A stretch of DNA of 63,896 nt, the filler included, from Lenisia limosa (lineage: Eukaryota > Protista > Breviatea): assembly GCA_001655205.1 (NCBI GenBank). It is 10 parts of 10 records of this genome, joined end to end, with 100 filler letters (N's around TTAATTAATTAA, not from the genome) between each part and the next. Parts side by side here need not be neighbours in the genome. Positions count along the whole stretch, not along the records: positions 28,241 to 54,309 come from LPNZ01008640.1; 9 more parts are not named here. The stretch is one strand, 5' to 3'. Both the position numbers and the translations under genes were made by a program. Shown here piece by piece: positions 36,601 to 54,569 of this stretch (position 1 is the stretch's first letter; each line of letters opens with the position of its first letter). The notes beneath the pieces are model-generated. The model was not told the origin of the DNA. It saw only the letters and a program-made list of their open reading frames with translations, and searched no databases.

Positions 36601-36773
36601 NNNNNNNNNNNNNNNNNNNNNNNNNNNNNNNNNNNNNNNNNNNNNNNNNNNNNNNNNNNNNNNNNNNNNNNNNNNNNNNNNNNNNNNNNNNNNNNNNNNN
36701 NTGTGCAATTGTGCAATTTATATATTATTTTTTTGTGTTGCATTGTGATATATTGTTCATATTGATTTGAATC

Positions 36774-39700
36774 ATGAAAGTGCTTCTATTTGCCTTTTTG
36801 GCACTTTTAGGTGTTGCTTTCGCTCAAGAACGTAGGTATCCGGTAAAAAGTAACAGTTTGACCACTTCAGTTGATGGAGTTGTTCTCCCAACAAGGAAGG
36901 TTAACCGTAAGCCAGACTTTATCCAGTCTTTATTGTAATTTAGCTGTCCCTGAGGGCACTGTGATGCCGAAGCATGAGCGTGAGTATTTCGATAGACTTC
37001 CACCCAAAGTTAGCCGTGGCTACTCAACCTCTATCTCTGATAACACTAATTCCTGGCAATATATCTGTAATATGTCGTTGAATTGGGAATAAAGCGTGGA
37101 GAAGTGAAATTCGGCCACCTGACAAAAGTGTTCTGAGTGTTTTCTGAGCTATGGCCGATCTTGAATCTTTGCAATAATTTTGAAGCCATGTTGTGTTTTT
37201 TTGGTTTGAATTAACCGATTTACTGCCATGAAATGAGCAAAGGTTCTCAGCAATAATTAGCCCGGGGTTGCTCCTCTGCTTGTTATTAAACCGCCAGCTC
37301 TTCACATTAACCGGCAGGATATTGAGACCGATGAGAGATGCGGAATGGGCAAGGAAGAGCAGATGAGTTCCCACAGAAGAAGAAGTGGGAGGCAGTCAAG
37401 ATCATTTGGCTTCTCCTCACTGTACTGAATAACTGGTTCAGATGTTGACACTGTGACCTCGCGCGACCCCTACCTTCAAGAAGTGGTATGCTCTTTACTT
37501 CATCTAATAAGACACTTGGACGTTATCTCGGAAGAGTGATTCTGACCCCCCCCCCTCAGATCCCAGCCTGTGGAGAGGATGTCTGTGATGTCCCCGAGCT
37601 TATTGAAGGCTACGTTACGTACATGGATGCTGGCAAAATGTCTCCTCCCACTCTTGGTATTCGGTGCTGGAATGATAAACTAATCTTTAACTTGGATGAT
37701 GTTTACCATTCTAGCGGTCAACGTGATTCAAGTACAGAACACTGGCGGACAGAAGATGCCTACTGACACTCAGACTTCCCAGCAGCTCACTGTTGTATGT
37801 GGCNNNNNNNNNNNNNNNNNNNNNNNNNNNNNNNNNNNNNNNNNNNNNNNNNNNNNNNNNNNNNNNNNNNNNNNNNNNNNNNNNNNNNNNNNNNNNNNNN
37901 NNNNNNNNNNNNNNNNNNNNNNNNNCAAGACCATCGTTTCTGACGGTTGGTTATTTTGGGGCACTCCGCTTATTTGTCAAGGATTTATGGCAGATAGAAA
38001 TTTGCTCTTCTGACTTCCCTAGATTTTTACGCTCTTACTGTAGTCCCCTTCTGCGACCGCCCGTATGTGAAAGATGTTTAATATCTTTGTGCTTCTTTTT
38101 GTGGAATGCGACGAATAAAATTTGTCTCACAAACATGGAAATAATAGTTTAGTGGAGACGGCCAGTGTGACGACTCATGTGACTACCTCACTACCGGTTT
38201 GTGGACTTGCCTCTTCTTTATTGTCCTTGTTTATTCCCGCAATTACTGCTGTTCACGTGCTCGTCTTCCTATGCGCCGTATGTATCCACTCCCGTCTCAC
38301 ACTTCAGGATTCGATGGAGGCGATTGCACTGAGTATGCCAAATCTGCTTTTTGAGATATTGTGCATGCTCCCTAGTATAAAAGTAATCAAATCATGGTTT
38401 CATTTGGGTAAAACCCAAACTGCTCAACCTAGTGTGTTCTTTTGTGTTCTTTTGTGTTTGTGCTTGTAGTGTGATCCAGGACAATAGGATCGAAAAAATT
38501 GCCAGTGGAGTGGTTTGTTCTGTTGGCCTCACAACCTCAGTTCCAAGAGCGTCTGGGAGAGCCATTGTGTCTACGGCAGTGGTCGTCCCCATACCACCCT
38601 TTCTGGTGGGCGCTACACTAATTTTGCTCCGATGCCGGGGAGGGGCTCTTGATCTCATATTGTAGCTTGCAACTCTGGACAGTGCAGCAACAACGGATGG
38701 ACCTGTGCTCCGGCCTGCACCAGCGGCATGACCAGCAACGGCGTGTGTGACGAGGCTTGCAACATCAAGGAGCACAAGTGGGTCATGGGGCGCAGGTCTT
38801 AAAGTTCACAAGTTGTTATTATTTTTTGTGTCATCATCCCTAATGTATGGCGTTATCCCTTGTGACTTTGCAGCTACGATGGTGGAGAGTGCTGCCTCAA
38901 GTCCGGCAACGCCCTCAAATACCCCGGAAAATGCAGAGACCCTTCATCAAGCAACCGTCTCGCTGGTCTGCCACTTATCTTCCCTTGTATATGATATGAT
39001 ATATTATGCTATAGTACTACACGTCTTTTTCCACGTTTAAATACCACAACTGGTTCTGAACAGGCTTTTGAAAAATGCTGATTGACCTTACAGGATGGAT
39101 GAATGCCCCTACTTTCAAGCTCAACGTCCAAAACGTTCTCAAAAACAACAACGAACTTGATGACGGCCTTTATGCCTACGTCAAACAAGTGGGCTGTTAT
39201 GTCTTTCCTCTTCAATGAACAAGCCTGACCCCCCCAGTTCGACAGCAAGGACCTTCTCCTCGGCTATGCCACTTTCCCCTGGTCCAATGACCTTCTTGGC
39301 GGTGTCTTCATGGGTGCTCATGTCAGAGGGACACAAATCAAAGAAGGCTTTGGCCAACTTCCTTTAGTCGTTTCCACATGCCCTTTACCTTCGACTCATC
39401 TTCCAGGCCTGGGGTGTTGTCGGCTCCTTTACTGGGGTCACTGCTGCTCATGAGGTGGGGGGCTTCATTAAACTATCGATATTTTGCTGGTCTTTTTTGA
39501 ACCGAAGTGAAGCTCTACCTGCCATCATCATTCATTACCGCCTGCCATCATCCTCTGGTTATCATTGCCCTGTTTTGACCGAGCAGATTGGCCATTGCTT
39601 TGGCCTCTACCACGTTTTCCACGGACAAAGCGAGAGTGTGTCGGGGTTCAGATTGTTTCCTTCAAAGCTTCAATGCAACGGGCCTAAAGACAGCGTTATT

Positions 39701-41018
39701 GATTCTTCTTCTGACGCGTACAGTTGACAGCTGCTCGCACCCCTGCTACGAGGGTGTCAACTCTGCATCGTCCATGACTAATGGTGACATGTGCTCGGAC
39801 ACCACCATGACTCCCACAATGTTTACTTGCTCAGCTCCTGATGCCTGCTCTTCCTGTATGCTTGTCTCACGTGCCAAAGCTCCTGTCATTTCCTCATATT
39901 TCTAGCCGCCCCTAAGGGCTGTGACGTCTGTGCCGGCACCGACATGACCATCACCAATGACGTGCTCAAGAACTACATGTACGCCAACTAAGCTTTCAAT
40001 GAAAAGAAATGAGTGTATTTTTTGGCTCATTTTGCCAGGAATTACGGGCCTGATAGCTGCCTCAACCAGTACACCAAGCAGCAGTATGCGAGACAGCGTT
40101 GCTACGTCGACCTCATGTACGGCGACTGGATGATTGATGACGCCGATACTGCCGTGGGGAGGGCTCTCAAGCCAGTTGACATAATCCGAAAAATCAGGGG
40201 GCGTAACTCCTAGGACACAAGGGATATATGTATGTACACTTGCTTATTCCTCCATCTGACAATCCAGGCCCAAGTTGCTACCCCCTCCCCCGTTGTTATT
40301 GCCCCTGTGGTTTGTGGCGACCCTCGCTTTTGCTTCTTTTGGCTATTCAGCCGCCACCCCTTGACTCTGCCAGGTTTACGACAAGGACACCCATTATCTG
40401 GTAGCATGGCATCGCTCTATCTACGAGCCCTCCGGAACCAAGTAAGCCCTTGCTCTTAACAGGGAATACTAAAGGACCGTGCCACTCGTTACACCGCTAA
40501 CTCCCAGATACGAGGTGACCCGTACCCCGGCCTTCTCCTCTGCTGTCGTTGTTGAGGCTCCTTCCGCCGCCAACGGTACGCGGCTTCAAAGAATCATTTC
40601 TATGTTTATCAAGGTTTTATCGACCAACAAGTGGTATTATATCATCATATACGATGTCACTCTTGCCCCCCTCCCCTCACACCGCAGCCGCAGTGACGTA
40701 TTCCGACTCCGATCGTCAAGAGGGCGCCAAATACACGTGAGTTGAGATTTGTCATAGCCTAAACTGGATCGGTCCTAAATAACCGCTTATTTCCCAAAAT
40801 CCCCCCTTCCATAACCAGCCTAGTATTACCGCCTTTGTTGGGTCGAATAAGGCCTCTCCGTCCCCGGATTCCCTGGATGTTGTCGTGTCCCCCGCTTCTG
40901 TCCCGTGAGCAAGGGTCCTGATATCTTGATGATGATAATACCAACAGTTGATTTGAACTGATTGTGTAGCATGGTCGCTTTCACTGCTCTGGTTACCCTT
41001 ATTGCCCTACTCTTCTAA
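36774..41018 (+). CDS. PAPPA: Pappalysin (PAPP-A)-like M43 zinc metalloprotease with signal peptide, LNR module and hydrophobic C-terminus
   Basis: MKVLLFAFLALLGVAFAQE signal; IPACGEDVCDVPELIEGY; LNR CAPACTSGMTSNGVCDEACNIKEHNYDGGECC; CRDPSSSNR; LGYATFPWSNDLLGGVFM; zinc motif HE|IGHCFGLYHVFHG; GDMCSDT; Met-turn NYM; YTKQQYARQRCYVDLMYGDW; terminal MVAFTALVTLIALLF* (TAA 41016-41018). Confidence 0.88.
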
Positions 41019-41350
41019 ATCCTTTGATACATAAATTTTGGTTTAAACTGTTTTTTGATACTTATTGCGATCGGGAAATTAGGATCACGTAACGAATATG
41101 CTAGATGATTTTAATGCAGGGATGCTTGAGAAGGGAAGTATTCCAGTTCTTTAAGGGTCTACCGCAATCCAAGCTTTGCCCTATTCAAAAACCATTGAAA
41201 GTACAACACGTAAATAAGACCAGACCTGGAACCGAAACAAGACAAACACCCACATAAACTAAATCAGACAAAATAAAAAATAAAAACCAATAATAAAACC
41301 ATACCTAAATCAAGTCCATCACTTGAGTCAGAATCAACTCCCTGTCCGCC

Positions 41351-47300: not shown

Positions 47301-50300
47301 CACTGCCTATTCATAGCCTGACTTGGGCGAACCTTGCCAAACTGGATTCTGCCAGATTCTGCTGTGTCAGCGGCACAGCAAATGCCATTTTAGCAGTAGC
47401 CGTGGTTTCGTCATCAGAGCTAGCCAGGATCGAAGATAGAGACGATGCTGAGGACATGGACATGATGTCCTCAGCCTCGTCAAGACCCACATTGAGCCCG
47501 TCAAGCTTCTGGCAGAAGTCGCCGTCGTCGTCATCGGAATAATCATGGCTCGTAGGCGTCAGTTTGATGTTGTCGGAAACTTCAGGTTCGGAGGTAAACA
47601 TGAGTTGGGGGGAGATCAAGTCACTGTTAAATGGCTCAATGTCAGAAATAGACTCCGATCCTGAAGGGTGAGTGAGACCTTCCAAAAGGACTGTTAGACA
47701 GAAAGCGACAAGTCCGACCTGAGTTGTCTTCCTCGGATATGACAGCGTCTGAATAGTAAGTTTGTGAGTGGGCTAATCTATTCATAAAAGTAGTGGGTAA
47801 GCCTCGGATTATATACCACTGAAACACCCATCTACAAACAGAAGATGTGAATACCGGCAACAGCAAGGAAAACCACCCACCAAGCTGACTAGCAACAAGT
47901 ACTGGTGGTGCACTGAGTGGCGAAGGTCGTACTGACACTGGGGGGGGGGGGNNNNNNNNNNNNNNNNNNNNNNNNNNNNNNNNNNNNNNNNNNNNNNNNN
48001 NNNNNNNNNNNNNNNNNNNNNNNNNNNNNNNNNNNNNATTGGGACGAGCTTTATTATCAACATTGTGACTCGAGCTTGGGACTCGAGCTTTATTATCAAC
48101 ATTGGGAATACCTGTTGGTGGCGGTGCAGGGCGTACACAGTCTGAGGAGAGCTCAAAAAGCTTTCTCCACCCTGACTACTGTGAGTTGTATCATTAATTG
48201 ATGAGTGGGACTGAACCAGATGGTCTTCCCCTGGCTTACGCGGGTTTCTGACAAGGTCTTCTGCAGACTTGGTTGCTGAGGCTTCCCATGAGCGAAGACT
48301 CTGTCAACATTATTAATGTCAAAGAGGATCATATATTACATATGTTCCATTGATGACACGACGCTGGTTTTTTGAACCCGACAGAATAACAAATATTTCA
48401 GCATAGCTTACTTTTGCTGACTCCCTGATACATGCCCAAGCCTCCTGCGCAAGTGTCGTTGTGGCGCTGGTGGGCTCCTTAGGGGTGAAATGAAAAGGGA
48501 GCTGAGAATTCACCAATAAGGGGTGAAATGAAAAGTTCGAACAATATGATTTGAACTGACATTCATTGCATCAGCAAGACGTTTCTGCACAGGATGTCCA
48601 AGTTGCTCCCCAATGAATTGCAGAACTGTCAGGTGAATAGACGCAGTAAGTAAAAAAAACAGCAAAGATAATTTTTGTGTATGAAATGGTATTAATGCCC
48701 TTTGGTGTTTTACTTTGCTTTATCCCTCAGTACTCTCATTTGGGATAATGGCTGATCTCTCATGGTGCGTCAGGGCACTTAGATAGTACTCAGCTGCAGT
48801 AAAGGATTCCTAAATCGTAATGGACGGGACGATGGAGAAGCTCACAACCAATGCCACACCCACATCGATATTGACATCAACAGCCACAACAATCTCGTCA
48901 AAGAACCGCTTTGATAATGCTCCGTTTTCAAGGCTTGGCGAAATTCCAATTCTTGAGAAGTTACAAGGACATTAAAGAAATGACAAGGTGATTCTTATCT
49001 ATTATACCCGATACTAACTCGAAAGCTATCGCCGCCATCAAGGGTTTGTTGTATTGGATGATGCTTCTAAAAGGTCATGAACATTGAAACAGCAACAACC
49101 AACCGAGCAAGCCAGTCAGTGATTGGGAGTTCAGCCATGTTGGAAAACCGCTTCTTCGGATGAAGCTTCGACAGTTTCGGCATGAGCTTGCAGCCGAATA
49201 TGCACATTCCTAAATTTCATAAGTTAACCACACAAACGCACCGTAGATCCAGTTGTACTGGACAATGAACCCTGCGAGTGATTGAGCTTTACAAGGGAGA
49301 AGACTCGGCATCAGGTTTGCAAGGTTGGGCATGACATTAANNNNNNNNNNNNNNNNNNNNNNNNNNNNNNNNNNNNNNNNNNNNNNNNNNNNNNNNNNNN
49401 NNNNNNNNNNNNNNNNNNNNNNNNNNNNNNNNNNTCCCATAGGGGAAGAGCAATAGCTTGAGTTCATCCATAAAAGATGTCCTACCTGAGAGCTGAGAGA
49501 TAAGGCTCCACTTCTTGAACTGTGCAGTATTCATCCAAGGTGTCTCTCTAGTATGTGAACAATTTCCCATCACTCAGACCACTTCGGCTTGATTTCCTGG
49601 GTCCCCATATCACAATTATAGCAATTCTTTGGACATTCCTCGTACCTCCTTCTGTCTCAGTAGGACACTCTCCAAGCAAGTTGTTGCTGCAGCCAGCACG
49701 TAGCCTTGTACACTGGAACGGAACATCGGGCTGATGGCTGGGTTTGGGGCCTCGCTGTTGTCATACGGGCTAGGGTATGAGGATGGTATGGATTCCTCCT
49801 CCAAATAATCTTGCTATTGCTCACGTGAAGTACTCTGGAGAATAGTCCTCATCATCAACAACATGTGTGGCGTAGGGCTGGCCCAAGTACGTCTGCAAAA
49901 GTAAACGAGCAGCACTATTTATCCAGACGGTTTTTTCCAGGTATGCAATTCTTTTGAAACCGGATATGAATCATGGATAAGGGAGCTGTAACAAACCTCA
50001 ATGGGGAGAATGAAAGAGGGGTCACCAGTCAACGTAAGGAGGTAAACGATCAAAGCAATGGTTCGGAACAGTTCGTCCTCGTGAACCGGGAGATCAAAGT
50101 CCGTACCTGCTTTATCAGACTCGTAGCAAATCGTACATATACCATACCAGTTGAGCCTCGTACCCAATTCCCACCATCATCAATACCAGCTTGCTTCATT
50201 TTCCTTCTTTTGAAGTACATCACAAGAAGGCTGTCGATATACGAAGACGCCTGTACAAGGAACTGAAGCGTCCGTGTTTGGATTACTGCAGAAAATCATA

Positions 50301-53300
50301 TGACAGTTATTCATCAAAACACAACACAACCCAGCATATTGCCTTCGTGGTCTCACCCATCGATCCGTCGCCAATCTTGAAGTGCTTGAAGAGACTCTCC
50401 ACTGCAATTCGAAGATGGATGAAGGGAGAAACATCTCCTACAAAGTCAGCTCTATTTTTCAAAATATACAACATAATCCATCAATCAGCAAAAGCTACAA
50501 ACCATATGATGTCGGTTTAGCTGCCTTGAGCGCTTCAAGAGAACACAGAAGTTGGGGGATGGGCATTAGGGATGCTAAACAAACACTAGCAAAATCCAGA
50601 CCCCGAGACGCGGTGATTTTACGAGCCTTGGAAAAGAGAATCTGGGAGGGGGGGGGGGGNNNNNNNNNNNNNNNNNNNNNNNNNNNNNNNNNNNNNNNNN
50701 NNNNNNNNNNNNNNNNNNNNNNNNNNNNNNNNNNNNNNNNNNNNCACATGACTAGTTAGATCTCTGACTACTCTGTGTAATTATAGTACACAGGCTAGTT
50801 AGATCTCTGACTACTCTGTGTAATTACAGTACACATGGCTAGTTAGATCTCTAAGACCTCCATGGGGTATCAAGAAGAGCGCATGGACTTACAGAGAAGA
50901 ACTGGAGGAGAGCCGCGCATCCTTGCATATTGTGGCGCAATGCGTACAAGCTGACGTCAAATAACGACATATAACCAAAACTGGAGGGGGAAATGAGATG
51001 AGTAGAAATCCAAGATGTTTGAAGCATTATCTGGGGGCGAATCTTTATAACAATGTACAATATGAGAACAACAATGGATATATCAGTTGGCTTACGGAGT
51101 GTTTATCTCTACGAAACCCGAGACGTTGTGGATCAGAAGCGAGTTGACAAAACCAACATCAGTAAACATTGGGTGGGGCTGAAGATAAGATCAATAACCT
51201 GGTTCGGCCTACCTTTACTGACGAATTGAACGGTGTGAGTTGTTGTTGTGTGTTAATAAAGTGCTCCCCTAGGTCCGCCTATCTTGTCATTATCTCTTCA
51301 GCAAGGCCGTACAGCTTCAAAAAAACGGAAATTTCTGGATAAATCCTCGGTAAATATCGATATATTGGTATTTTCTCGGACCACAGTGAACGCATTCAAT
51401 CATTCACCCACATTGTTCTCAAACCCAGCCTTGAGCTCAGTCAGAAACTTCGGTGAAGCTGCCAGCACCTGATGGTCAATGGTTGATGGAATAGAATACC
51501 AAAGAAACATGTATCTAGTAAGCCATCAACACCATCCATAATAATAGAACAGGGAAATCTATCCCACCGCCTATTTCAAGTTATAATCCCGGATTATCCT
51601 TGTCATAATGTGAGAGACTTTTCCAAAAAGGAAAACAGTCTGCTAAAAAAGATCCATACCTCAATCCATTGACTGTTTCTGCCTTTTGCAGCGTGAACAA
51701 GCCAAAGGGGAGTGATGACAGCCGCAATGCTGTGCGTCTGAAGGATCAGAGGGTAACACTAGCCCGAGGAATACTTGTGGAATATCAGGGAGTCAAGTCA
51801 TAAAACCTAGTAAAATTGCATCACAAACCGATGGTCGGCACCAATCATTGATGAACATATGCGACCTGAGTGATGAACAAGAAGAGTTATGCCGAAATAC
51901 GAGTCAGATTAACATGGGCTCACTTGAATATTGAAGCACACAAGAAGGCCGTTTCTATTGAGACAACTACTCCATAGGGGTGGTATCGACCTGGTTGCAG
52001 TAAGTTGTCCCATTGAAAGCCTTGATAGCCCCCTCCTGTTGAAAGCCTTGCTGACCTGCTGAGGTTCCGAGGTCCAATGGGACGGTGTCGGCGTTATATG
52101 ACGTATCGGGAAGGCCGATACTCAGTGTCGACGTGAAGACAGCCATGCAGAGATGGTAGAACGCAGTAACTGCCGAAAATAAAGAGGAGGATGGAAGCGG
52201 ATCCAAAAGAAAAGTCCTGGGAACCGAACGTACCGGAAAGTGAAACTGGTGGGTGGATGTTGTTGCTGTTCAAATTGGCCAGAAGAAGCTTGGTCATTGG
52301 TTCTAAAGTGTTAGGTTTTATTTGGAAAGAAAGCCATGAGATTTGTTATTTCCAGAGTTTTGTTTGGAAAAGGAACTCAAGGATTTAATAGATTACAAAT
52401 ATTGTCAACAAACCTCCAAATAAGAGACAGGCAAGGTGGGCAGAAAAGTGCAAGGCCGAAAGGTGGATAGGATGTGTACAAAAGTTCTTATTTTGACAGA
52501 GCCTGATGAATTCATAAAAGAGACTTAAATTACCCCGTTGAACATTATTTTCAATAAAAGCACAGAAAAGACATATCCCAACGTACTGGTCCTGAAATAC
52601 AGGGAACATGCCCCAAATCACAATGTAGGGAAGAACTCGAAGGATCAAAAACTAAAAGAGTAAATAATAAATAAATATCACATCAACATATCGACATCAG
52701 TAAACAACAACCTTCAAAATATTAAAGAAAGGGATATACCAAGGCTTGCAATCTACCAGCACCACCAGACCATTTCAATTTCTTCATCCTCACTAAATTG
52801 AAGTACTTTATCCAGCATCAAGGCAATGATTTCAGGCTCTAGGAAGTCAGCGGACAATGCCCACTAACAATGGAACAAACAGCTTACTCTTTTGTGTTTT
52901 GGTGGCGGCAAATGCCAGGTTAATTAACATGCTGTGGTGGGGTGGAAACCTCAGCATTCGTTCAATGAGATGGGGAAAGTCTGATCTCCACGACTCAAAT
53001 GCCTGTCGCTGGGGAGATGGGGGAGTAAAATGAAGGAAACTTCGACGAAGAATACTGCAGTAAAGTTGATGGTATGGCAAAACGTGCTGCAACAAGCGGA
53101 AAAAGAAAAACAACAAATTCCAATAAGGAAATTGTTTTGCTCATGAGCAGCCCCAATAAAAAAAGCATAAGCAGCCCACCAGTCGGACAGCGTCTGGATC
53201 GGAGGCAAACCGTTTCTCAAGACTTGGCATCCGACCTAAACCGTGACAGTTGTCAAAAAAACTAAAACAATACAAACTCCAGGCTTTGCTGTGTGAAGAC

Positions 53301-53592
53301 TATTGCACCTTAGAATGACCTGGGACCCACTTTCATTGATTTGCTGCAAAAGCCGTTGGAAGAACTCAGGAACAAAGCGGTCCCAGCAATCTGGGGACAT
53401 TGCCAGGTACCACAGCTCCTCAAGATCGGTACTATCATCCTCTTCTGCTCCCTTTAATTCATTGTCAATGTAGACCTGTCGGGAAAATGGCTCCACAACC
53501 TTCTTCTTTCTTCGTTTGCGAGTTTTGGCAAGAGGTGGTGGAGGGGAGGCCGCCAACCCCGGCTTTGCCGATTTAGCTTTTTTTCTTACCAT
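41351..53592 (-). CDS. Very large multi-exon gene (or two genes), probably an alpha-helical solenoid/scaffold, unidentified
   Basis: Starts MVRKKAKSAKPGLAASPPPPLAKTRKRRKKK (ATG 53592). Dozens of Leu-rich exons separated by short introns, with a central Ser/Asp-rich exon at ~47300-47690. No catalytic motif seen; the 3' end may extend to ~41100. Confidence 0.5.
50746..50852. repeat. ~47-bp tandem repeat x~2.3
   Basis: ctagttagatctctgactactctgtgtaatta(t/c)agtacaca repeated. Confidence 0.85.
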
Positions 53593-54021
53593 AATAAATA
53601 TTTTACTGTTCCATCATAGTACAAAGAGGAAGAGAGAAGACAGAAGAGATCGGAGGAAGAAGAATCTTTACACTAGTTACATGTGTAGCGCTTAAGGATT
53701 TTCCTGTTTTTTCCGTCCCTCTAATCCATATTACAGCCAATGTAAGCTGTGTTTATAGAGACACATGGGGTTTCATGATCTATCTGCGCTTTTTTTTTTC
53801 TTTTGGGTTTCATATTTGCTTCCAAACGGATTGTTGACCATTTTTGACACATTTTAGAGAGTTTTGGGAGCTTTTTGGGAACTGAAGGTGGGGAACACTT
53901 GGATTTCTTCTTTTTCTTGTCTTTGGGCACTTTCATAGCAATTGGGCTGTTATGATCTCATTTTTCTATGAATTGGGCTTCATGGCTGATACTGTCTCCT
54001 TTTATTTTGTGATCTCCTCAG

Positions 54022-54292
54022 ATGGGAGACAGCATGAACCAGAACATGGGTGGAATGGGCCAGATGGGTGGTATGGGCCAAATGGGAGGCAACCAGGGCA
54101 ACATGATGACCAACCAGAGCAACATGATGGCTAACCAGTCCAATATGATGGCTAACCAGGGCATGATGGGCGGCAACATGATGGGAAACATGGGTGGCAA
54201 CATGATGGGTGGCAACATGCCTGAAATGCGTCCTAGTGGAAGCATGAACGACGACTATGACAAGACTAACAGATCTCGTGACCGTGATTACA
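54022..54292 (+). CDS. Met/Gly/Asn/Gln-rich low-complexity exon of a truncated gene, possibly RNA-binding
   Basis: MGDSMNQNMGGMGQMGGMGQMGGNQGNMMTNQSNMMANQ...DYDKTNRSRDRDY, bounded by ctcag and gtatg. Synonymous variation between repeat units supports coding status. Confidence 0.7.
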
Positions 54293-54569
54293 GTATGCTG
54301 CTGAATTTTNNNNNNNNNNNNNNNNNNNNNNNNNNNNNNNNNNNNNNNNNNNNTTAATTAATTAANNNNNNNNNNNNNNNNNNNNNNNNNNNNNNNNNNN
54401 NNNNNNNNNAAAACAAACAAAGCCCAGGCCAGTGCACCGCATTCCATCATTCCAGCCGAGGGAAAAGAATAACACAAAATATCAAAGAACGAGGGGGGTT
54501 CATTAGAAGGAGAAAGACGGTGTATGAAAGAGAAAACAAAAGAAAATTGCCCCCCCGCCGCCGCCCCAC

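What the first reader, a model, noticed from the sequence alone, without database searches (positions are those of the whole stretch)
36774..41018. Pappalysin-type protease with an LNR (Notch-like) module inside the catalytic domain, in a protist-like genome
Seen: signal peptide, C-x3-CD 'PACGEDVCDVPELIEGY', LNR 'NGVCDEACN...YDGGECC', 'GYATFPW', HEIGHCFGLYHVFHG, 'GDMCSDT', Met-turn and a hydrophobic tail. Known: vertebrate PAPP-A has the same order of blocks (PPCGQTLCDN...LNR1/2...AGVATWPW...HEIGHSLGLYHVFRG), whereas prokaryotic ulilysin-type M43 enzymes lack LNR. Here I see one LNR and no LamG or CCP modules, and the protein appears membrane/GPI-anchored. Inference: the LNR-in-M43 architecture predates animals or moved laterally, acting on a non-IGFBP substrate.
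Basis: partly seen in the sequence, partly recalled or inferred. Interest (0 to 1): 0.75.

Follow-up and report, generated by a model that had tools for sequence, protein, structure and literature searches.

The report
Pappalysin protease with two LNR modules
This is a real, expressed, very intron-rich gene for a secreted zinc protease built like the catalytic core of the human growth-regulating enzyme PAPP-A (two Notch-type calcium-binding modules inside the protease domain) but without PAPP-A's other domains, a "transitional" form that a 2025 survey of the family said it could not find.

Summary
One poly-A RNA contig from a public run joins them into one mRNA through GT..AG introns. My model has 27 exons and 613 codons. 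The assembly gap lies in an intron region and hides about 39 nt, or 13 codons. The RNA contig bridges it and the length arithmetic keeps the frame. There is no LamG, CCP/SCR or third LNR.

The joined model, compared in local scripts only, matches transcriptome proteins of Heterolobosea, Soliformovum (Amoebozoa), Diphylleia (CRuMs) and Palpitomonas, plus marine contigs, at E up to 4e-64. It matches animal PAPP-A-like proteins at E 1e-42. In a tree these eukaryotic proteins separate from bacterial M43 (100/100). The animals form a clade without the window protein (99/98), but a sister position is not rejected (AU p 0.30).

The host organism could not be named. The architecture is not unique to this genome, but I found no paper describing it. 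Kjeldsen and Oxvig (2025) reported no such intermediate.

The parts
36774..41018 (+). Whole coding region of the pappalysin-like gene (ATG 36774 to stop TAA 41016-41018). It has 27 exons, 613 codons including 13 unread ones, and the transcript starts at or before 36727.
   Evidence: RNA contig joints; model built
36774..36831 (+). Exon 1: start codon and signal peptide (residues 1-17, ...AFA|QE). An in-frame TGA lies at 36768-36770 upstream.
36871..36906 (+). Exon 2 (pro-segment)
   Evidence: joints 36831>36871 and 36906>36944
36944..37008 (+). Exon 3 (pro-segment)
37318..37384 (+). Exon 4: pro-segment with Arg60-Cys61-Gly62 (37333-37350), a candidate cysteine switch, and the basic cluster HRRR (37372-37383), a candidate activation site.
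   Evidence: motif compared with mirolysin in PMC6949598
37442..37485 (+). Exon 5
   Evidence: (cut +1)
37560..37656 (+). Exon 6: start of the catalytic domain, with the C-G-x-x-V-C-D-x-P motif shared with animal PAPP-A and protist homologues.
37715..37794 (+). Exon 7: first beta strand and helix of the catalytic domain. It ends in phase 0 before a GTATGT donor.
37804..37925 (.). Assembly gap. It hides about 39 nt (13 codons) of the mRNA (exon 8, or part of one). Both flanks are on the same RNA contig and in frame.
   Evidence: record arithmetic (positions 414-731 of the contig)
37998..38062 (+). Exon 9. The RNA alignment begins at about 38003, and the AG acceptor is at 37996-37997.
38153..38196 (+). 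Exon 10: first part of LNR1 (GDGQCDDSCDYLTT)
38308..38332 (+). Exon 11: end of LNR1 (FDGGDCT)
38541..38605 (+). Exon 12: start of the Cys-rich insert between LNR1 and LNR2. This insert is absent from animal PAPP-A.
38666..38777 (+). Exon 13: rest of the insert and first part of LNR2 (SNGVCDEACN...)
   Evidence: (Pfam Notch, E 0.0027, 18.5 bits for profile positions 3-30)
38874..38965 (+). Exon 14: end of LNR2 (YDGGECC) and the conserved CRDPSSSNR
39094..39188 (+). Exon 15 (catalytic domain)
39238..39321 (+). Exon 16: GYATFPW strand
39407..39454 (+). Exon 17: ends with H371-E372 of the zinc motif
39587..39635 (+). Exon 18: IGHCFGLYHVFHG, the rest of HEXXHXXGXXH
39724..39855 (+). Exon 19: Cys-rich segment with GDMCSDTTMTP
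   Evidence: (contig positions 1213-1344)
39906..39978 (+). Exon 20: ends in the Met-turn codon (NYM, codon split by the intron)
   Evidence: contig length arithmetic (73 nt)
40039..40153 (+). Exon 21: C-terminal helix of the catalytic domain (RCYVDLMYGDW). It is the best exon-level match to human PAPP-A.
   Evidence: (PDB 8a7d, E 5.4e-4)
40268..40309 (+). Exon 22: linker
   Evidence: depth arithmetic
40374..40441 (+). Exon 23: FN3-like domain
40508..40575 (+). Exon 24: FN3-like domain (YEVTRTPAFSS, shared with protist homologues)
40688..40736 (+). Exon 25: FN3-like domain. The RNA contig ends at about 40730.
40824..40904 (+). Exon 26 (predicted only): end of the FN3-like domain. If the next intron is retained, a TGA at 40905-40907 ends the protein here.
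   Evidence: only ORF-preserving GT-AG combination; no RNA cover
40970..41018 (+). Exon 27 (predicted only): 15-residue hydrophobic C-terminal tail and stop codon
   Evidence: mean Kyte-Doolittle value 2.64

Best explanation
The locus is an expressed nuclear gene of an intron-rich eukaryote, most likely not an animal. It encodes a 613-residue secreted zinc endopeptidase of the pappalysin family (MEROPS M43B).

Shown:
- The mRNA is spliced from at least 25 short exons.
- It encodes a signal peptide and a pro-segment of about 58 residues.
- The catalytic domain has HEIGHCFGLYH and a Met-turn, and two PAPP-A-type LNR modules are inserted in the position of LNR1 and LNR2 of PAPP-A.
- A single FN3-like domain follows.

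Inferred mechanism:
- The protein is made as a zymogen in which Cys61 of an Arg-Cys-Gly motif caps the catalytic zinc. This is the cysteine switch of mirolysin, whose pro-segment holds a conserved Cys-Gly dipeptide.
- It is activated by cleavage at the HRRR cluster. Pappalysins prefer Arg or Lys in S1', and mirolysin activates itself at a Ser-Arg bond.
- The two LNR modules bind calcium beside the active-site cleft and help choose substrates, as LNR1-3 do in PAPP-A.
- The hydrophobic C-terminal tail tethers the enzyme to the cell surface, probably through a GPI anchor. It would then act as a surface protease on an unknown substrate that is not an IGFBP.

Evolutionary reading: the gene belongs to an undescribed group of protist pappalysins that bridges the single-domain 'unicellular' pappalysins and the multidomain PAPP-A of animals.
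For: - Splicing and expression: one poly-A RNA contig with 23 joints; the 15 listed are GT..AG. The 8 not listed equal the 7 further introns of my model plus one joint across the gap. The spliced sequence is a single ORF.
- Family: exon 21 hits only PAPP-A and PAPP-A2 among solved structures at E below 0.01. Exon-level Pfam gives Peptidase_M43 and Notch/LNR.
- Local blastp of the joined model: 31% identity over 584 aa to Heterolobosea sp. BB2 (E 4e-64), 30% over 562 aa to Soliformovum (E 2e-61), and 30% over 439 aa to a full-length Ptychodera PAPP-A-like protein, residues 316-690 (E 1e-42).
- Alignment: LNR1, LNR2, the zinc site, GDxxxDTxPTP, the Met-turn and the RCYxDL helix all align without rearrangement.
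- Tree: eukaryotic LNR-bearing proteins split from bacterial M43 at 100/100; the animals form a clade at 99/98 that excludes the window protein.
- Shared non-animal traits: a 45-59 residue Cys-rich spacer between LNR1 and LNR2, against 19-26 residues in animals; the FN3-like motif TRTPAFSS; no LamG.
- Fold proxy: an AlphaFold model of the Soliformovum homologue matches PAPP-A cryo-EM structures (E 2.8e-28, TMq 0.57) far better than ulilysin or mirolysin (E about 1e-6, TMq 0.27), and its C-terminal domain matches FN3.
- Membrane anchoring is common in the group: transmembrane helix plus tail in Diphylleia, Palpitomonas and the P0023 cluster; a bare hydrophobic tail in Soliformovum and here.
- Cysteine switch and S1' preference: PMC6949598.
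Against: - The full spliced protein could not be given to Pfam, HMMER or AlphaFold. Exon-level Pfam scores are below the curated cut-offs (M43 13.9 bits against 23; Notch 18.5 against 21.2).
- Thirteen residues are unread.
- The last two exons and the anchor tail have no RNA support, and no GPI predictor was available. The spacer before the tail is short for a textbook GPI signal.
- The host is unidentified. The AU test does not reject the window protein as sister to the animal clade (p 0.30), and its branch is long (1.61).
- The other protist homologues lack a Cys-Gly in the pro-segment (they have Cys-Ala, Cys-Thr or Cys-His), so the switch motif is not conserved within the group.
- The fold evidence comes from a homologue with mean pLDDT of only 65.6.
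Confidence: 0.85

Rival explanations
1. The host, or a contaminating scaffold, is an animal, and this is a much reduced or early-branching orthologue of invertebrate PAPP-A that has lost LamG, M, SCR and LNR3.
For: The AU test does not reject window plus animals as one clade (p 0.30). LNR1 is intact and 60% identical to hemichordate LNR1, whereas it is degenerate in three protist homologues. Exon 21 is 53-54% identical to the Ptychodera and Dirofilaria proteins.
Against: - The animals form a 99/98 clade without it.
- It carries the long Cys-rich LNR1-LNR2 spacer and the FN3 signature of the protist group.
- Overall it is more similar to the Heterolobosea and Soliformovum proteins (E 4e-64 and 2e-61) than to any animal protein (E 1e-42).
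- All metazoan pappalysins surveyed keep the complete domain set (PMC11925022).
- It has about 14 introns per kb of coding sequence, introns of 37-309 nt, and a branch-site motif 8-12 nt from the acceptor. From my own knowledge this is not typical of animals.
- No protein at least 50% identical exists in the 15-billion-protein collection.
Confidence: 0.12
2. The patchy occurrence in Discoba, Amoebozoa, CRuMs, Palpitomonas and this genome reflects lateral transfer between eukaryotes, from or into the animal stem, rather than an old, vertically inherited gene with many losses.
For: The distribution is sparse: only a handful of species among the transcriptome sets reached by my searches. The protist branches are an unresolved polytomy with long branches. 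Spacer length is animal-like in the P0023 cluster (23) and between two of Palpitomonas's three LNRs (29), and long in the others.
Against: The protist sequences are only 27-38% identical to each other and to animals, so any transfer would be ancient. Animals are not nested among them with support, nor they within animals. My searches were shallow: a 38-residue query needing 36 bits or more, plus word-based searches. The true distribution is therefore unknown.
Confidence: 0.25
3. The cysteine-rich segments are not true LNR modules but convergent disulfide loops, and the protein is an ordinary 'unicellular' M43 with decorated loops.
For: Exon-level Pfam Notch scores are under the gathering cut-off (18.5 and 14.3 bits against 21.2). 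Ulilysin and mirolysin have a short 'LNR-like loop' at this position (PMC6949598).
Against: - Each exon holds only part of a module, and LNR2's exon already scores 18.5 bits on profile positions 3-30 of 36.
- Both modules align column for column with LNR1 and LNR2 of animal pappalysins, including the DGGDC / DGGECC ends and the PAPP-A-specific Cys pattern.
- Homologues pass the Pfam cut-off: Palpitomonas 75.6 bits over three modules, P0004 32 bits, P0023 33 bits, P0011 32.7 bits.
- The homologue model matches PAPP-A rather than ulilysin.
Confidence: 0.04
4. The locus is a pseudogene, a mis-assembly or a chimeric scaffold, and the open frame is apparent only.
For: The scaffold has many N gaps, one of them inside the gene. 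Five bases at 37998-38002 are not covered by the RNA alignment.
Against: A poly-A transcript contig is collinear with about 4 kb of the scaffold. All its joints sit at GT..AG sites, and its lengths reproduce the model to the base. DNA contigs of run X2 match 37926-39513 and 39484-41100 without a difference. All catalytic residues are intact, and there is no stop in 600 read codons.
Confidence: 0.03

Closest known systems
Animal pappalysins: human PAPP-A and PAPP-A2 (PDB 8A7D, 7UFG, 7Y5N, 8SL1) and invertebrate PAPP-A (Kjeldsen and Oxvig 2025, PMC11925022)
   Same: An M43B catalytic domain that opens with C-G-x-x-[VI]-C-D. LNR1 and LNR2 are inserted at the same place with the same Cys pattern (4-Cys LNR1, LNR2 ending DGG[DE]CC). 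It has HEIGHxxGLYHVF, GDxCxDTxxTP, the Met-turn NYM and the RCYxDLxYxxW helix. About 30% identity over about 430 residues.
   Different: There is no LamG domain, no M region as such, no five SCR/CCP modules and no LNR3 or C domain. It is 613 residues against about 1550-1630. It has an extra Cys-rich stretch of about 30-35 residues between LNR1 and LNR2, a short pro-segment with Cys-Gly, and a hydrophobic anchor tail. It lies outside the animal clade (99/98).
Protist homologues in EukProt transcriptomes: Heterolobosea sp. BB2 (P0001), Soliformovum irregulare (P0002), Diphylleia rotans (P0015), Palpitomonas bilix (P0017); and environmental ORFs (P0010, P0011 from Tara marine metagenomes, P0023 cluster)
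   Same: The same order of parts: signal peptide, short pro-segment with one Cys, catalytic domain with LNR region, FN3-like domain, and usually a membrane anchor. It is 26-31% identical to the four named species and P0010 over 519-584 residues, 29% to the shorter P0011 over 388, and 24% to the P0023 cluster over about 540. Five of them share the long LNR1-LNR2 spacer.
   Different: The window protein keeps an intact LNR1, which is degenerate in P0001, P0002 and P0010. It has a Cys-Gly in the pro-segment and one FN3-like domain (P0001 has three). P0010 has HMMGH...D and is probably inactive. None is closer than about 31% overall, so none reveals the host.
Unicellular ('lower') pappalysins: ulilysin (2CKI), mirolysin (6R7V/6R7W), leptolysin, cytophagalysin
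   Same: The M43B fold family, the zinc motif and the Met-turn. [quoted passage not shown] Basic residues are expected in S1' (PMC6949598).
   Different: Those enzymes have only a short 'LNR-like loop' where this protein has two full LNR modules plus an insert. No exon of the window gave a PDB hit to them, and the homologue model matches them only at TMq 0.27. None of the bacterial M43 proteins retrieved has a Notch/LNR Pfam hit.
Notch-receptor LNR modules (Pfam PF00066)
   Same: A small calcium-binding disulfide module ending in [FYW]DGG[DE]C. The Pfam Notch model is the best hit of the LNR exons.
   Different: The modules here sit inside a protease domain rather than in tandem before a heterodimerisation domain. 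From my own knowledge of the Notch consensus, the fifth Cys of that pattern is missing, as it is in PAPP-A.

Membership tests
Pappalysin family (MEROPS M43B, Pfam PF05572) | Extended zinc-binding motif HEXXHXXGXXH | tested here: met
   HEIGHCFGLYH, residues 371-381, at 39449-39613. It is split by intron 39455-39586 and joined in the RNA contig.
Pappalysin family (MEROPS M43B, Pfam PF05572) | Met-turn methionine downstream of the zinc motif, in the context N-[FY]-M-x-Y | tested here: met
   KNYMNY, residues 454-459, aligns with NFMSY/NYMSY of PAPP-A-like proteins.
Pappalysin family (MEROPS M43B, Pfam PF05572) | Significant match to the family profile | tested here: inconclusive
   Only exon-level scans were allowed. 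Peptidase_M43 gave E 0.054 and 13.9 bits against a cut-off of 23 on the zinc-site exons. Indirect support: homologues P0003, P0004, P0007 and P0016 pass the cut-off, and the joined model matches them at E about 1e-39 to 1e-42 in a local blastp.
Pappalysin family (MEROPS M43B, Pfam PF05572) | Conserved Asp at the bottom of S1', giving Arg/Lys specificity | not tested
   An Asp in GPDSC after the Met-turn aligns with the D in YADDDC of PAPP-A. Its equivalence to mirolysin Asp289 was not checked against a structure.
Animal multidomain PAPP-A / PAPP-A2 / invPAPP-A | N-terminal laminin-G-like domain | tested here: not met
   Only 90 residues precede the catalytic domain (signal peptide plus pro-segment). 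An in-frame stop lies upstream of the ATG inside the transcript. Animal homologues show Laminin_G_3 in Pfam.
Animal multidomain PAPP-A / PAPP-A2 / invPAPP-A | LNR1 and LNR2 inserted in the catalytic domain | tested here: met
   LNR1 at 38052-38327 and LNR2 at 38704-38895, both upstream of the zinc motif, align with animal LNR1 and LNR2.
Animal multidomain PAPP-A / PAPP-A2 / invPAPP-A | Five SCR/CCP modules and a C domain with LNR3 | tested here: not met
   The ORF ends about 125 residues after the catalytic domain, with one FN3-like domain and a tail. No further DGG[DE]C or zinc motif is present in the 26-kb piece.
Animal multidomain PAPP-A / PAPP-A2 / invPAPP-A | Placement inside the animal pappalysin clade | tested here: not met
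   The animals form a clade at 99/98 that excludes the window protein. A sister position is not rejected (AU p 0.30).
Unicellular pappalysins (ulilysin/mirolysin type) | Short N-terminal pro-segment with a Cys-Gly cysteine switch | tested here: met
   Arg60-Cys61-Gly62 lies about 30 residues before the catalytic domain and is the only Cys of the pro-segment. The motif is described in PMC6949598. Its function was not tested.
Unicellular pappalysins (ulilysin/mirolysin type) | Catalytic domain alone, with only a short LNR-like loop | tested here: not met
   Two full LNR modules plus a Cys-rich insert (about 95 residues) occupy that position, and an FN3-like domain follows.
LNR / Notch domain (Pfam PF00066) | Profile match and the Cys / DGGDC calcium-binding pattern | tested here: inconclusive
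   Each module is split by an intron, so only parts could be scanned. LNR2 exon 13 gave 18.5 bits (cut-off 21.2) on profile positions 3-30. LNR1 read through its in-frame intron gave 14.3 bits. The patterns C-x8-C-x3-C-x11-C (LNR1) and C-x3-C-x9-C-x3-C-x11-CC (LNR2) equal those of animal pappalysins.
GPI-anchored proteins | C-terminal signal: small omega-site residues, a spacer, and a hydrophobic tail with no cytosolic residues | not testable with these tools
   ...VVVSPASVP is followed by 15 hydrophobic residues and the stop codon (mean Kyte-Doolittle value 2.64). No predictor was available, and this exon has no RNA support.

The most novel reading that the evidence does not exclude
This gene and its protist relatives are the 'transitional' pappalysin that Kjeldsen and Oxvig (2025) looked for and did not find. 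On this reading, the insertion of LNR1 and LNR2 into the M43 catalytic domain arose in unicellular eukaryotes well before animals. It existed as a cell-surface, cysteine-switch zymogen with an FN3 domain. Animal PAPP-A was then built from it by adding LamG, SCR modules and LNR3. The LNR module itself would be older than Notch receptors and would have served first in a protease.
Probability: 0.5. Interest if true: 0.75.

Novelty: new variant of a known kind. Interest (0 to 1): 0.62.

Why it matters
PAPP-A is a drug target, and its LNR modules determine which substrate it cuts. [quoted passage not shown] It also states that LNR modules are otherwise known only from Notch receptors (PMC11925022).

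This locus gives a genomic, transcript-supported example of such a form. The searches started from it turned up relatives in four deep eukaryotic lineages and in marine plankton.

This has three consequences:
- The origin of the LNR-in-protease design becomes testable.
- It offers a protein of about 600 residues for studying how LNR1 and LNR2 shape specificity without the other 1000 residues of PAPP-A.
- It shows that the design works outside any IGF/IGFBP system.

The caveat is that the sequences of the relatives are already public, so the novelty lies in recognising and describing them, not in new data.

Tried and rejected
- Joined protein left out of the database tools.
- Exon-level PDB search with exon 19 (43 aa) found nothing at E up to 10. 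The zinc-site read-through gave only weak PAPP-A hits (E 0.12) and a spurious hit caused by the translated intron.
- Word-based protein searches with P0002 and with a profile found few relatives. They did not even recover P0001, so they say little about distribution.
No scan was made.
- Host identification failed. No tRNA and no Rfam family were found in the piece. Ten long ORFs of the neighbourhood gave no Pfam hit. A codon-bias scan found almost no other coding-like segment.
- I considered Hyphochytrium catenoides, which has a 2016 assembly of similar size with gaps and three Notch-domain proteins (PMC5795050). I dropped the idea because its transcriptome was 454 data and it has 3.6 introns per gene. 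Nothing ties it to the window.
- The ESM Atlas search with P0002 returned only bacterial M43 and reprolysin clusters at scores of 0.82 or less.
- The tree does not resolve the order of the protist branches, and the AU test does not separate 'sister of animals' from other positions.
- No complex prediction was run, because no binding partner is claimed.

Full report
**1. The observation**

No single reading frame carries them. They lie in short open segments in all three + frames, as expected for a eukaryotic gene with many introns.

Direct evidence for splicing came from public reads. One study holds the locus both as DNA (run X2, all sampled words) and as poly-A RNA (run X1, 0.22 of the words, roughly the exon share).

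Laid on 36702-41100, X1 gives a single 1753-nt contig that is collinear with the scaffold from 36727 to about 40730. It has 23 joints. The 15 listed all have GT..AG ends.

I adjusted the listed cuts to the GT/AG dinucleotides and added the seven further introns that keep the frame open. The result is one open reading frame. Three checks support it:
- The anchor positions printed for the contig fit the model to the base: 317-413, 732-844, 845-935, 936-1031, 1032-1115, 1213-1344 and 1418-1532.
- The per-bin depths fit the exon lengths.
- The 8 unlisted joints equal my 7 remaining introns plus one joint over the gap.

**2. The gap (tested first, as asked)**

Exon 7 ends at 37794 in phase 0, in front of GTATGT. 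Exon 10 starts at 38153 in phase 2. Between them the RNA contig holds 104 nt (positions 495-598).

Exon 37998-38062 accounts for 65 nt. It has an AG acceptor at 37996-37997 and is open in the right frame. That leaves 39 nt, or 13 codons, that are not in the assembled letters and must lie in the gap 37804-37925.

So the two sides belong to one transcript, and the frame is kept (104 mod 3 = 2, as required). With 13 X in the model, the homologues align through this point without any indel.

One small discrepancy remains. By depth, the RNA alignment starts at about 38003 rather than 37998, which suggests a difference or assembly error in those five bases. The X2 DNA contig runs 124 nt further into the gap.

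**3. The protein**

The model has 27 exons of 25-132 nt and 25 assembled introns of 37-309 nt. It encodes 613 residues, 13 of them unread. In order:
- Signal peptide, residues 1-17. An in-frame TGA two codons upstream of the ATG lies inside the transcript, so there is no N-terminal extension.
- Pro-segment, residues 18 to about 75. It has a single Cys in Arg60-Cys61-Gly62, followed by HRRR (72-75).
- Catalytic domain from about residue 91 (IPACGEDVCD).
- LNR1, residues 181-205.
- A Cys-rich spacer.
- LNR2, residues 242-273, then CRDPSSSNR.
- GYATFPW, HEIGHCFGLYH (371-381), GDMCSDT, the Met-turn NYM (454-459), and RCYVDLMYGDW.
- A Pro/Val linker.
- An FN3-like domain of about 85 residues.
- A tail of 15 hydrophobic residues, then the stop codon.

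LNR1 (38052-38327) is split by an in-frame intron and is 15/25 identical to LNR1 of the Ptychodera protein. The piece holds no LamG, SCR/CCP or third LNR, and no second gene of this kind.

**4. Family assignment**

The joined protein was therefore not sent to any database tool, and I state that here as a limitation.

Exon-level Pfam gives Peptidase_M43 (E 0.054) on the zinc-site exons, and Notch/LNR on the LNR exons (E 0.0027 and 0.059). These are partial-domain scores below the cut-offs.

Exon 21 (38 aa) hits only PAPP-A and PAPP-A2 among 177,635 PDB sequences at E below 0.01. The best is 5.4e-4, with 47% identity over 30 residues.

The same exon, searched with HMMER against 1.84 billion representatives, found four proteins. 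Look-up showed them to be from Heterolobosea sp. BB2, Soliformovum irregulare, Ptychodera flava and Dirofilaria immitis. There was no self hit, so the window protein is not in that collection.

A later search with the heterolobosean protein added Diphylleia rotans, Palpitomonas bilix, a 23-member environmental cluster, more animal PAPP-A-like proteins and about 45 bacterial M43 proteins. Taxonomy was checked. One environmental homologue (P0011) sits on Tara Oceans marine metagenome contigs.

Pfam on these proteins shows the following:
- Notch/LNR at or above the cut-off in Soliformovum (21.6 bits), Palpitomonas (three modules, E 4e-21), P0011, P0023 and the animal proteins. The Heterolobosea protein scores 19.6 bits, just under the 21.2 cut-off.
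- Peptidase_M43 above the cut-off in four animal proteins (P0003, P0004, P0007, P0016).
- LamG and Sushi only in animals.
- fn3 in the heterolobosean protein.

None of the bacterial hits lists PF00066.

**5. Comparison of the joined model (local scripts only)**

Local blastp gave these matches:

| Subject | Identity | Aligned length | E-value |
|---|---|---|---|
| Heterolobosea sp. BB2 | 31% | 584 aa | 4e-64 |
| Soliformovum | 30% | 562 aa | 2e-61 |
| Diphylleia | 29% | 519 aa | 1e-48 |
| Ptychodera PAPP-A-like (residues 316-690) | 30% | 439 aa | about 1e-42 |
| Palpitomonas | 27% | 545 aa | 2e-38 |
| Bacterial M43 (second half of catalytic domain only) | 35-43% | 150-200 aa | - |

In the alignment all landmarks are collinear.

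Two traits set the window protein with non-animal sequences:
- The distance from the TGxDGG of LNR1 to the GNGxC of LNR2 is 54 residues here and 45-59 in four others. It is 19-26 in animals. It is 23 in the P0023 cluster, and 29 between two of Palpitomonas's three LNR modules.
- The FN3-like domain opens with the shared signature [YF]-x-[VI]-x-R-T-P-x-F.

Membrane anchoring is common in the group. Diphylleia, Palpitomonas and P0023 have a transmembrane helix plus a cytosolic tail. Soliformovum and the window protein have a bare hydrophobic C-terminus.

**6. Phylogeny**

I built an IQ-TREE (LG+C20 PMSF) tree of 30 rows: the window protein, 8 non-animal sequences, 5 animal sequences and 16 bacterial sequences, over 438 columns.
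- All LNR-bearing eukaryotic proteins separate from the bacterial M43 at 100/100.
- The animals form a clade at 99/98 that excludes the window protein.
- The non-animal branches are long and unresolved.

The tool warned of long-branch contact between the window row and Diphylleia. The AU test does not reject window plus animals as one clade (p 0.30). The tree therefore shows one eukaryotic LNR-pappalysin lineage and shows that the window protein is not inside sampled Metazoa. It does not give the branching order or a root within eukaryotes.

**7. Fold proxy**

The window protein could not be folded, so I folded the Soliformovum homologue with a 20-row alignment. Mean pLDDT was 65.6. The catalytic core and FN3 scored above 80, and the LNR region scored 55-66.

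Foldseek against the PDB ranks nine PAPP-A and PAPP-A2 cryo-EM chains first (E 2.8e-28 to 3.5e-23, TMq 0.50-0.57). Ulilysin and mirolysin follow far behind (E about 1e-6, TMq 0.24-0.28), then FN3 domains for the C-terminal part. This supports 'PAPP-A core plus FN3' for the group, and only indirectly for the window protein.

**8. Mechanism**

Shown: an intact metzincin active site (HEXXHXXGXXH plus Met-turn), a secretory signal, expression and splicing.

Inferred from the family literature:
- Guevara et al. 2020 (PMC6949598) show that mirolysin is kept latent by a short pro-segment. Its Cys, in a conserved Cys-Gly dipeptide, caps the zinc, and an Arg two residues before it enters S1'.
- Mirolysin activates itself at a Ser-Arg bond.
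- Pappalysins accept Arg or Lys in S1' because of a conserved Asp.

The window protein has Arg-Cys-Gly followed 10 residues later by HRRR, so a cysteine-switch zymogen activated at the basic cluster is the most likely mode.

In PAPP-A the LNR modules bind calcium and decide the cleavage of IGFBP-4 (PMC11925022). Here LNR1 and LNR2 probably form a calcium-dependent exosite next to the cleft.

The tail suggests a GPI anchor. If the last intron is retained, a TGA follows immediately (40905-40907), giving a soluble isoform. The substrate is unknown.

**9. Host**

The host was not identified. The run records are coded, and the piece holds no tRNA, no Rfam family and no recognisable neighbouring gene.

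The gene itself is unusual:
- About 14 introns per kb of coding sequence.
- Donors that fit GTNNGY, with G at +5 in 23 of 25.
- A YTNAY branch-site-like motif only 8-12 nt before the YAG acceptor in most introns.
- GC3 of 0.59 against 0.43 in introns.

From memory, such signals are described for some fungi, but they are not diagnostic. Taken together with the protein's traits and the tree, I put about 0.8 on a non-animal host.

**10. Novelty**

Kjeldsen and Oxvig (2025) state that no PAPP-A homologue was found outside animals and that no transitional multidomain pappalysin bridges ulilysin or mirolysin and PAPP-A. They also state that LNR modules are otherwise known only from Notch receptors. 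Their criterion was at least 90% coverage of human PAPP-A.

Three full-text searches found no paper describing LNR-bearing M43 proteases in protists.

I rate it a new variant of a known kind, of real interest to the PAPP-A and Notch-domain field but not a new kind of system.

Noticed in passing
window 39470-39517 (inside intron 39455-39586): A short dispersed repeat. In DNA run X2 the summed contig depth rises to about 800-1300 against about 35 elsewhere, and many contigs end here with unlike flanks. There is no second copy in the 26-kb piece.
   Followed up: partly
all 25 assembled introns, 36832-40969: The splice signals are unusual. Donors fit GTNNGY (G at +5 in 23/25). A YTNAY motif (CTGAC, CTCAC, TTGAC, CTCAT...) lies 8-12 nt upstream of the YAG acceptor, with no long pyrimidine tract. 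Exons average about 69 nt, which gives about 14 introns per kb of CDS. This may help to identify the host lineage.
   Followed up: partly
window 37998-38002 and 37802-37925: The RNA contig aligns only from about 38003, although the AG acceptor is at 37996-37997, so there may be a base difference or assembly error at the gap edge. The X2 DNA contig extends 124 nt into the gap from 37926 (loose end), so the gap could be closed from public reads.
   Followed up: no
window 40905-40907: The donor of the last intron (GTGAGC) sits directly after codon ...SVP, and the intron starts with an in-frame TGA (ccc|GTG AGC read as ccg TGA). Intron retention would therefore give a secreted isoform without the hydrophobic tail.
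   Followed up: no
P0010 (JGI sample 3300012469, locus L006): This environmental homologue has HMMGH...GLLD in place of HEXXH...GXXH. The catalytic Glu and the third zinc ligand are lost, so it is probably an inactive pseudo-protease that keeps LNR2 and the FN3-like domain.
   Followed up: no
P0011, loci L001-L004 (Tara and other marine metagenome contigs): The 374-residue ORF is uninterrupted from the catalytic-domain start to ...TNYM and then runs into VGRV and a stop. This looks like an intron beginning right after the Met-turn codon, the same place as intron 39979-40038 of the window gene.
   Followed up: no
window 54013-54309 (+), cut by the piece's edge: An open frame rich in Met, Gly, Asn and Gln (MGGMGQMGG..., NQSNMMANQ repeats). 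It has the strongest coding-like codon score outside the protease gene. No family was assigned.
   Followed up: no
window 47314-47772 (-) and 53239-53613 (-): Two further coding-looking open frames: one acidic and Ser-rich, and one with a basic N-terminus (KKAKSAKP...RKRRKKK). Neither has a Pfam hit. The rest of the piece looks gene-poor by codon bias.
   Followed up: partly
ESM Atlas clusters; bacterial hits P0031, P0036, P0048: Bacterial M43 proteins, mostly Bacteroidota, often carry an fn3 domain after the catalytic domain. The CD-FN3 pairing of the protist proteins may therefore be older than the LNR insertion.
   Followed up: no
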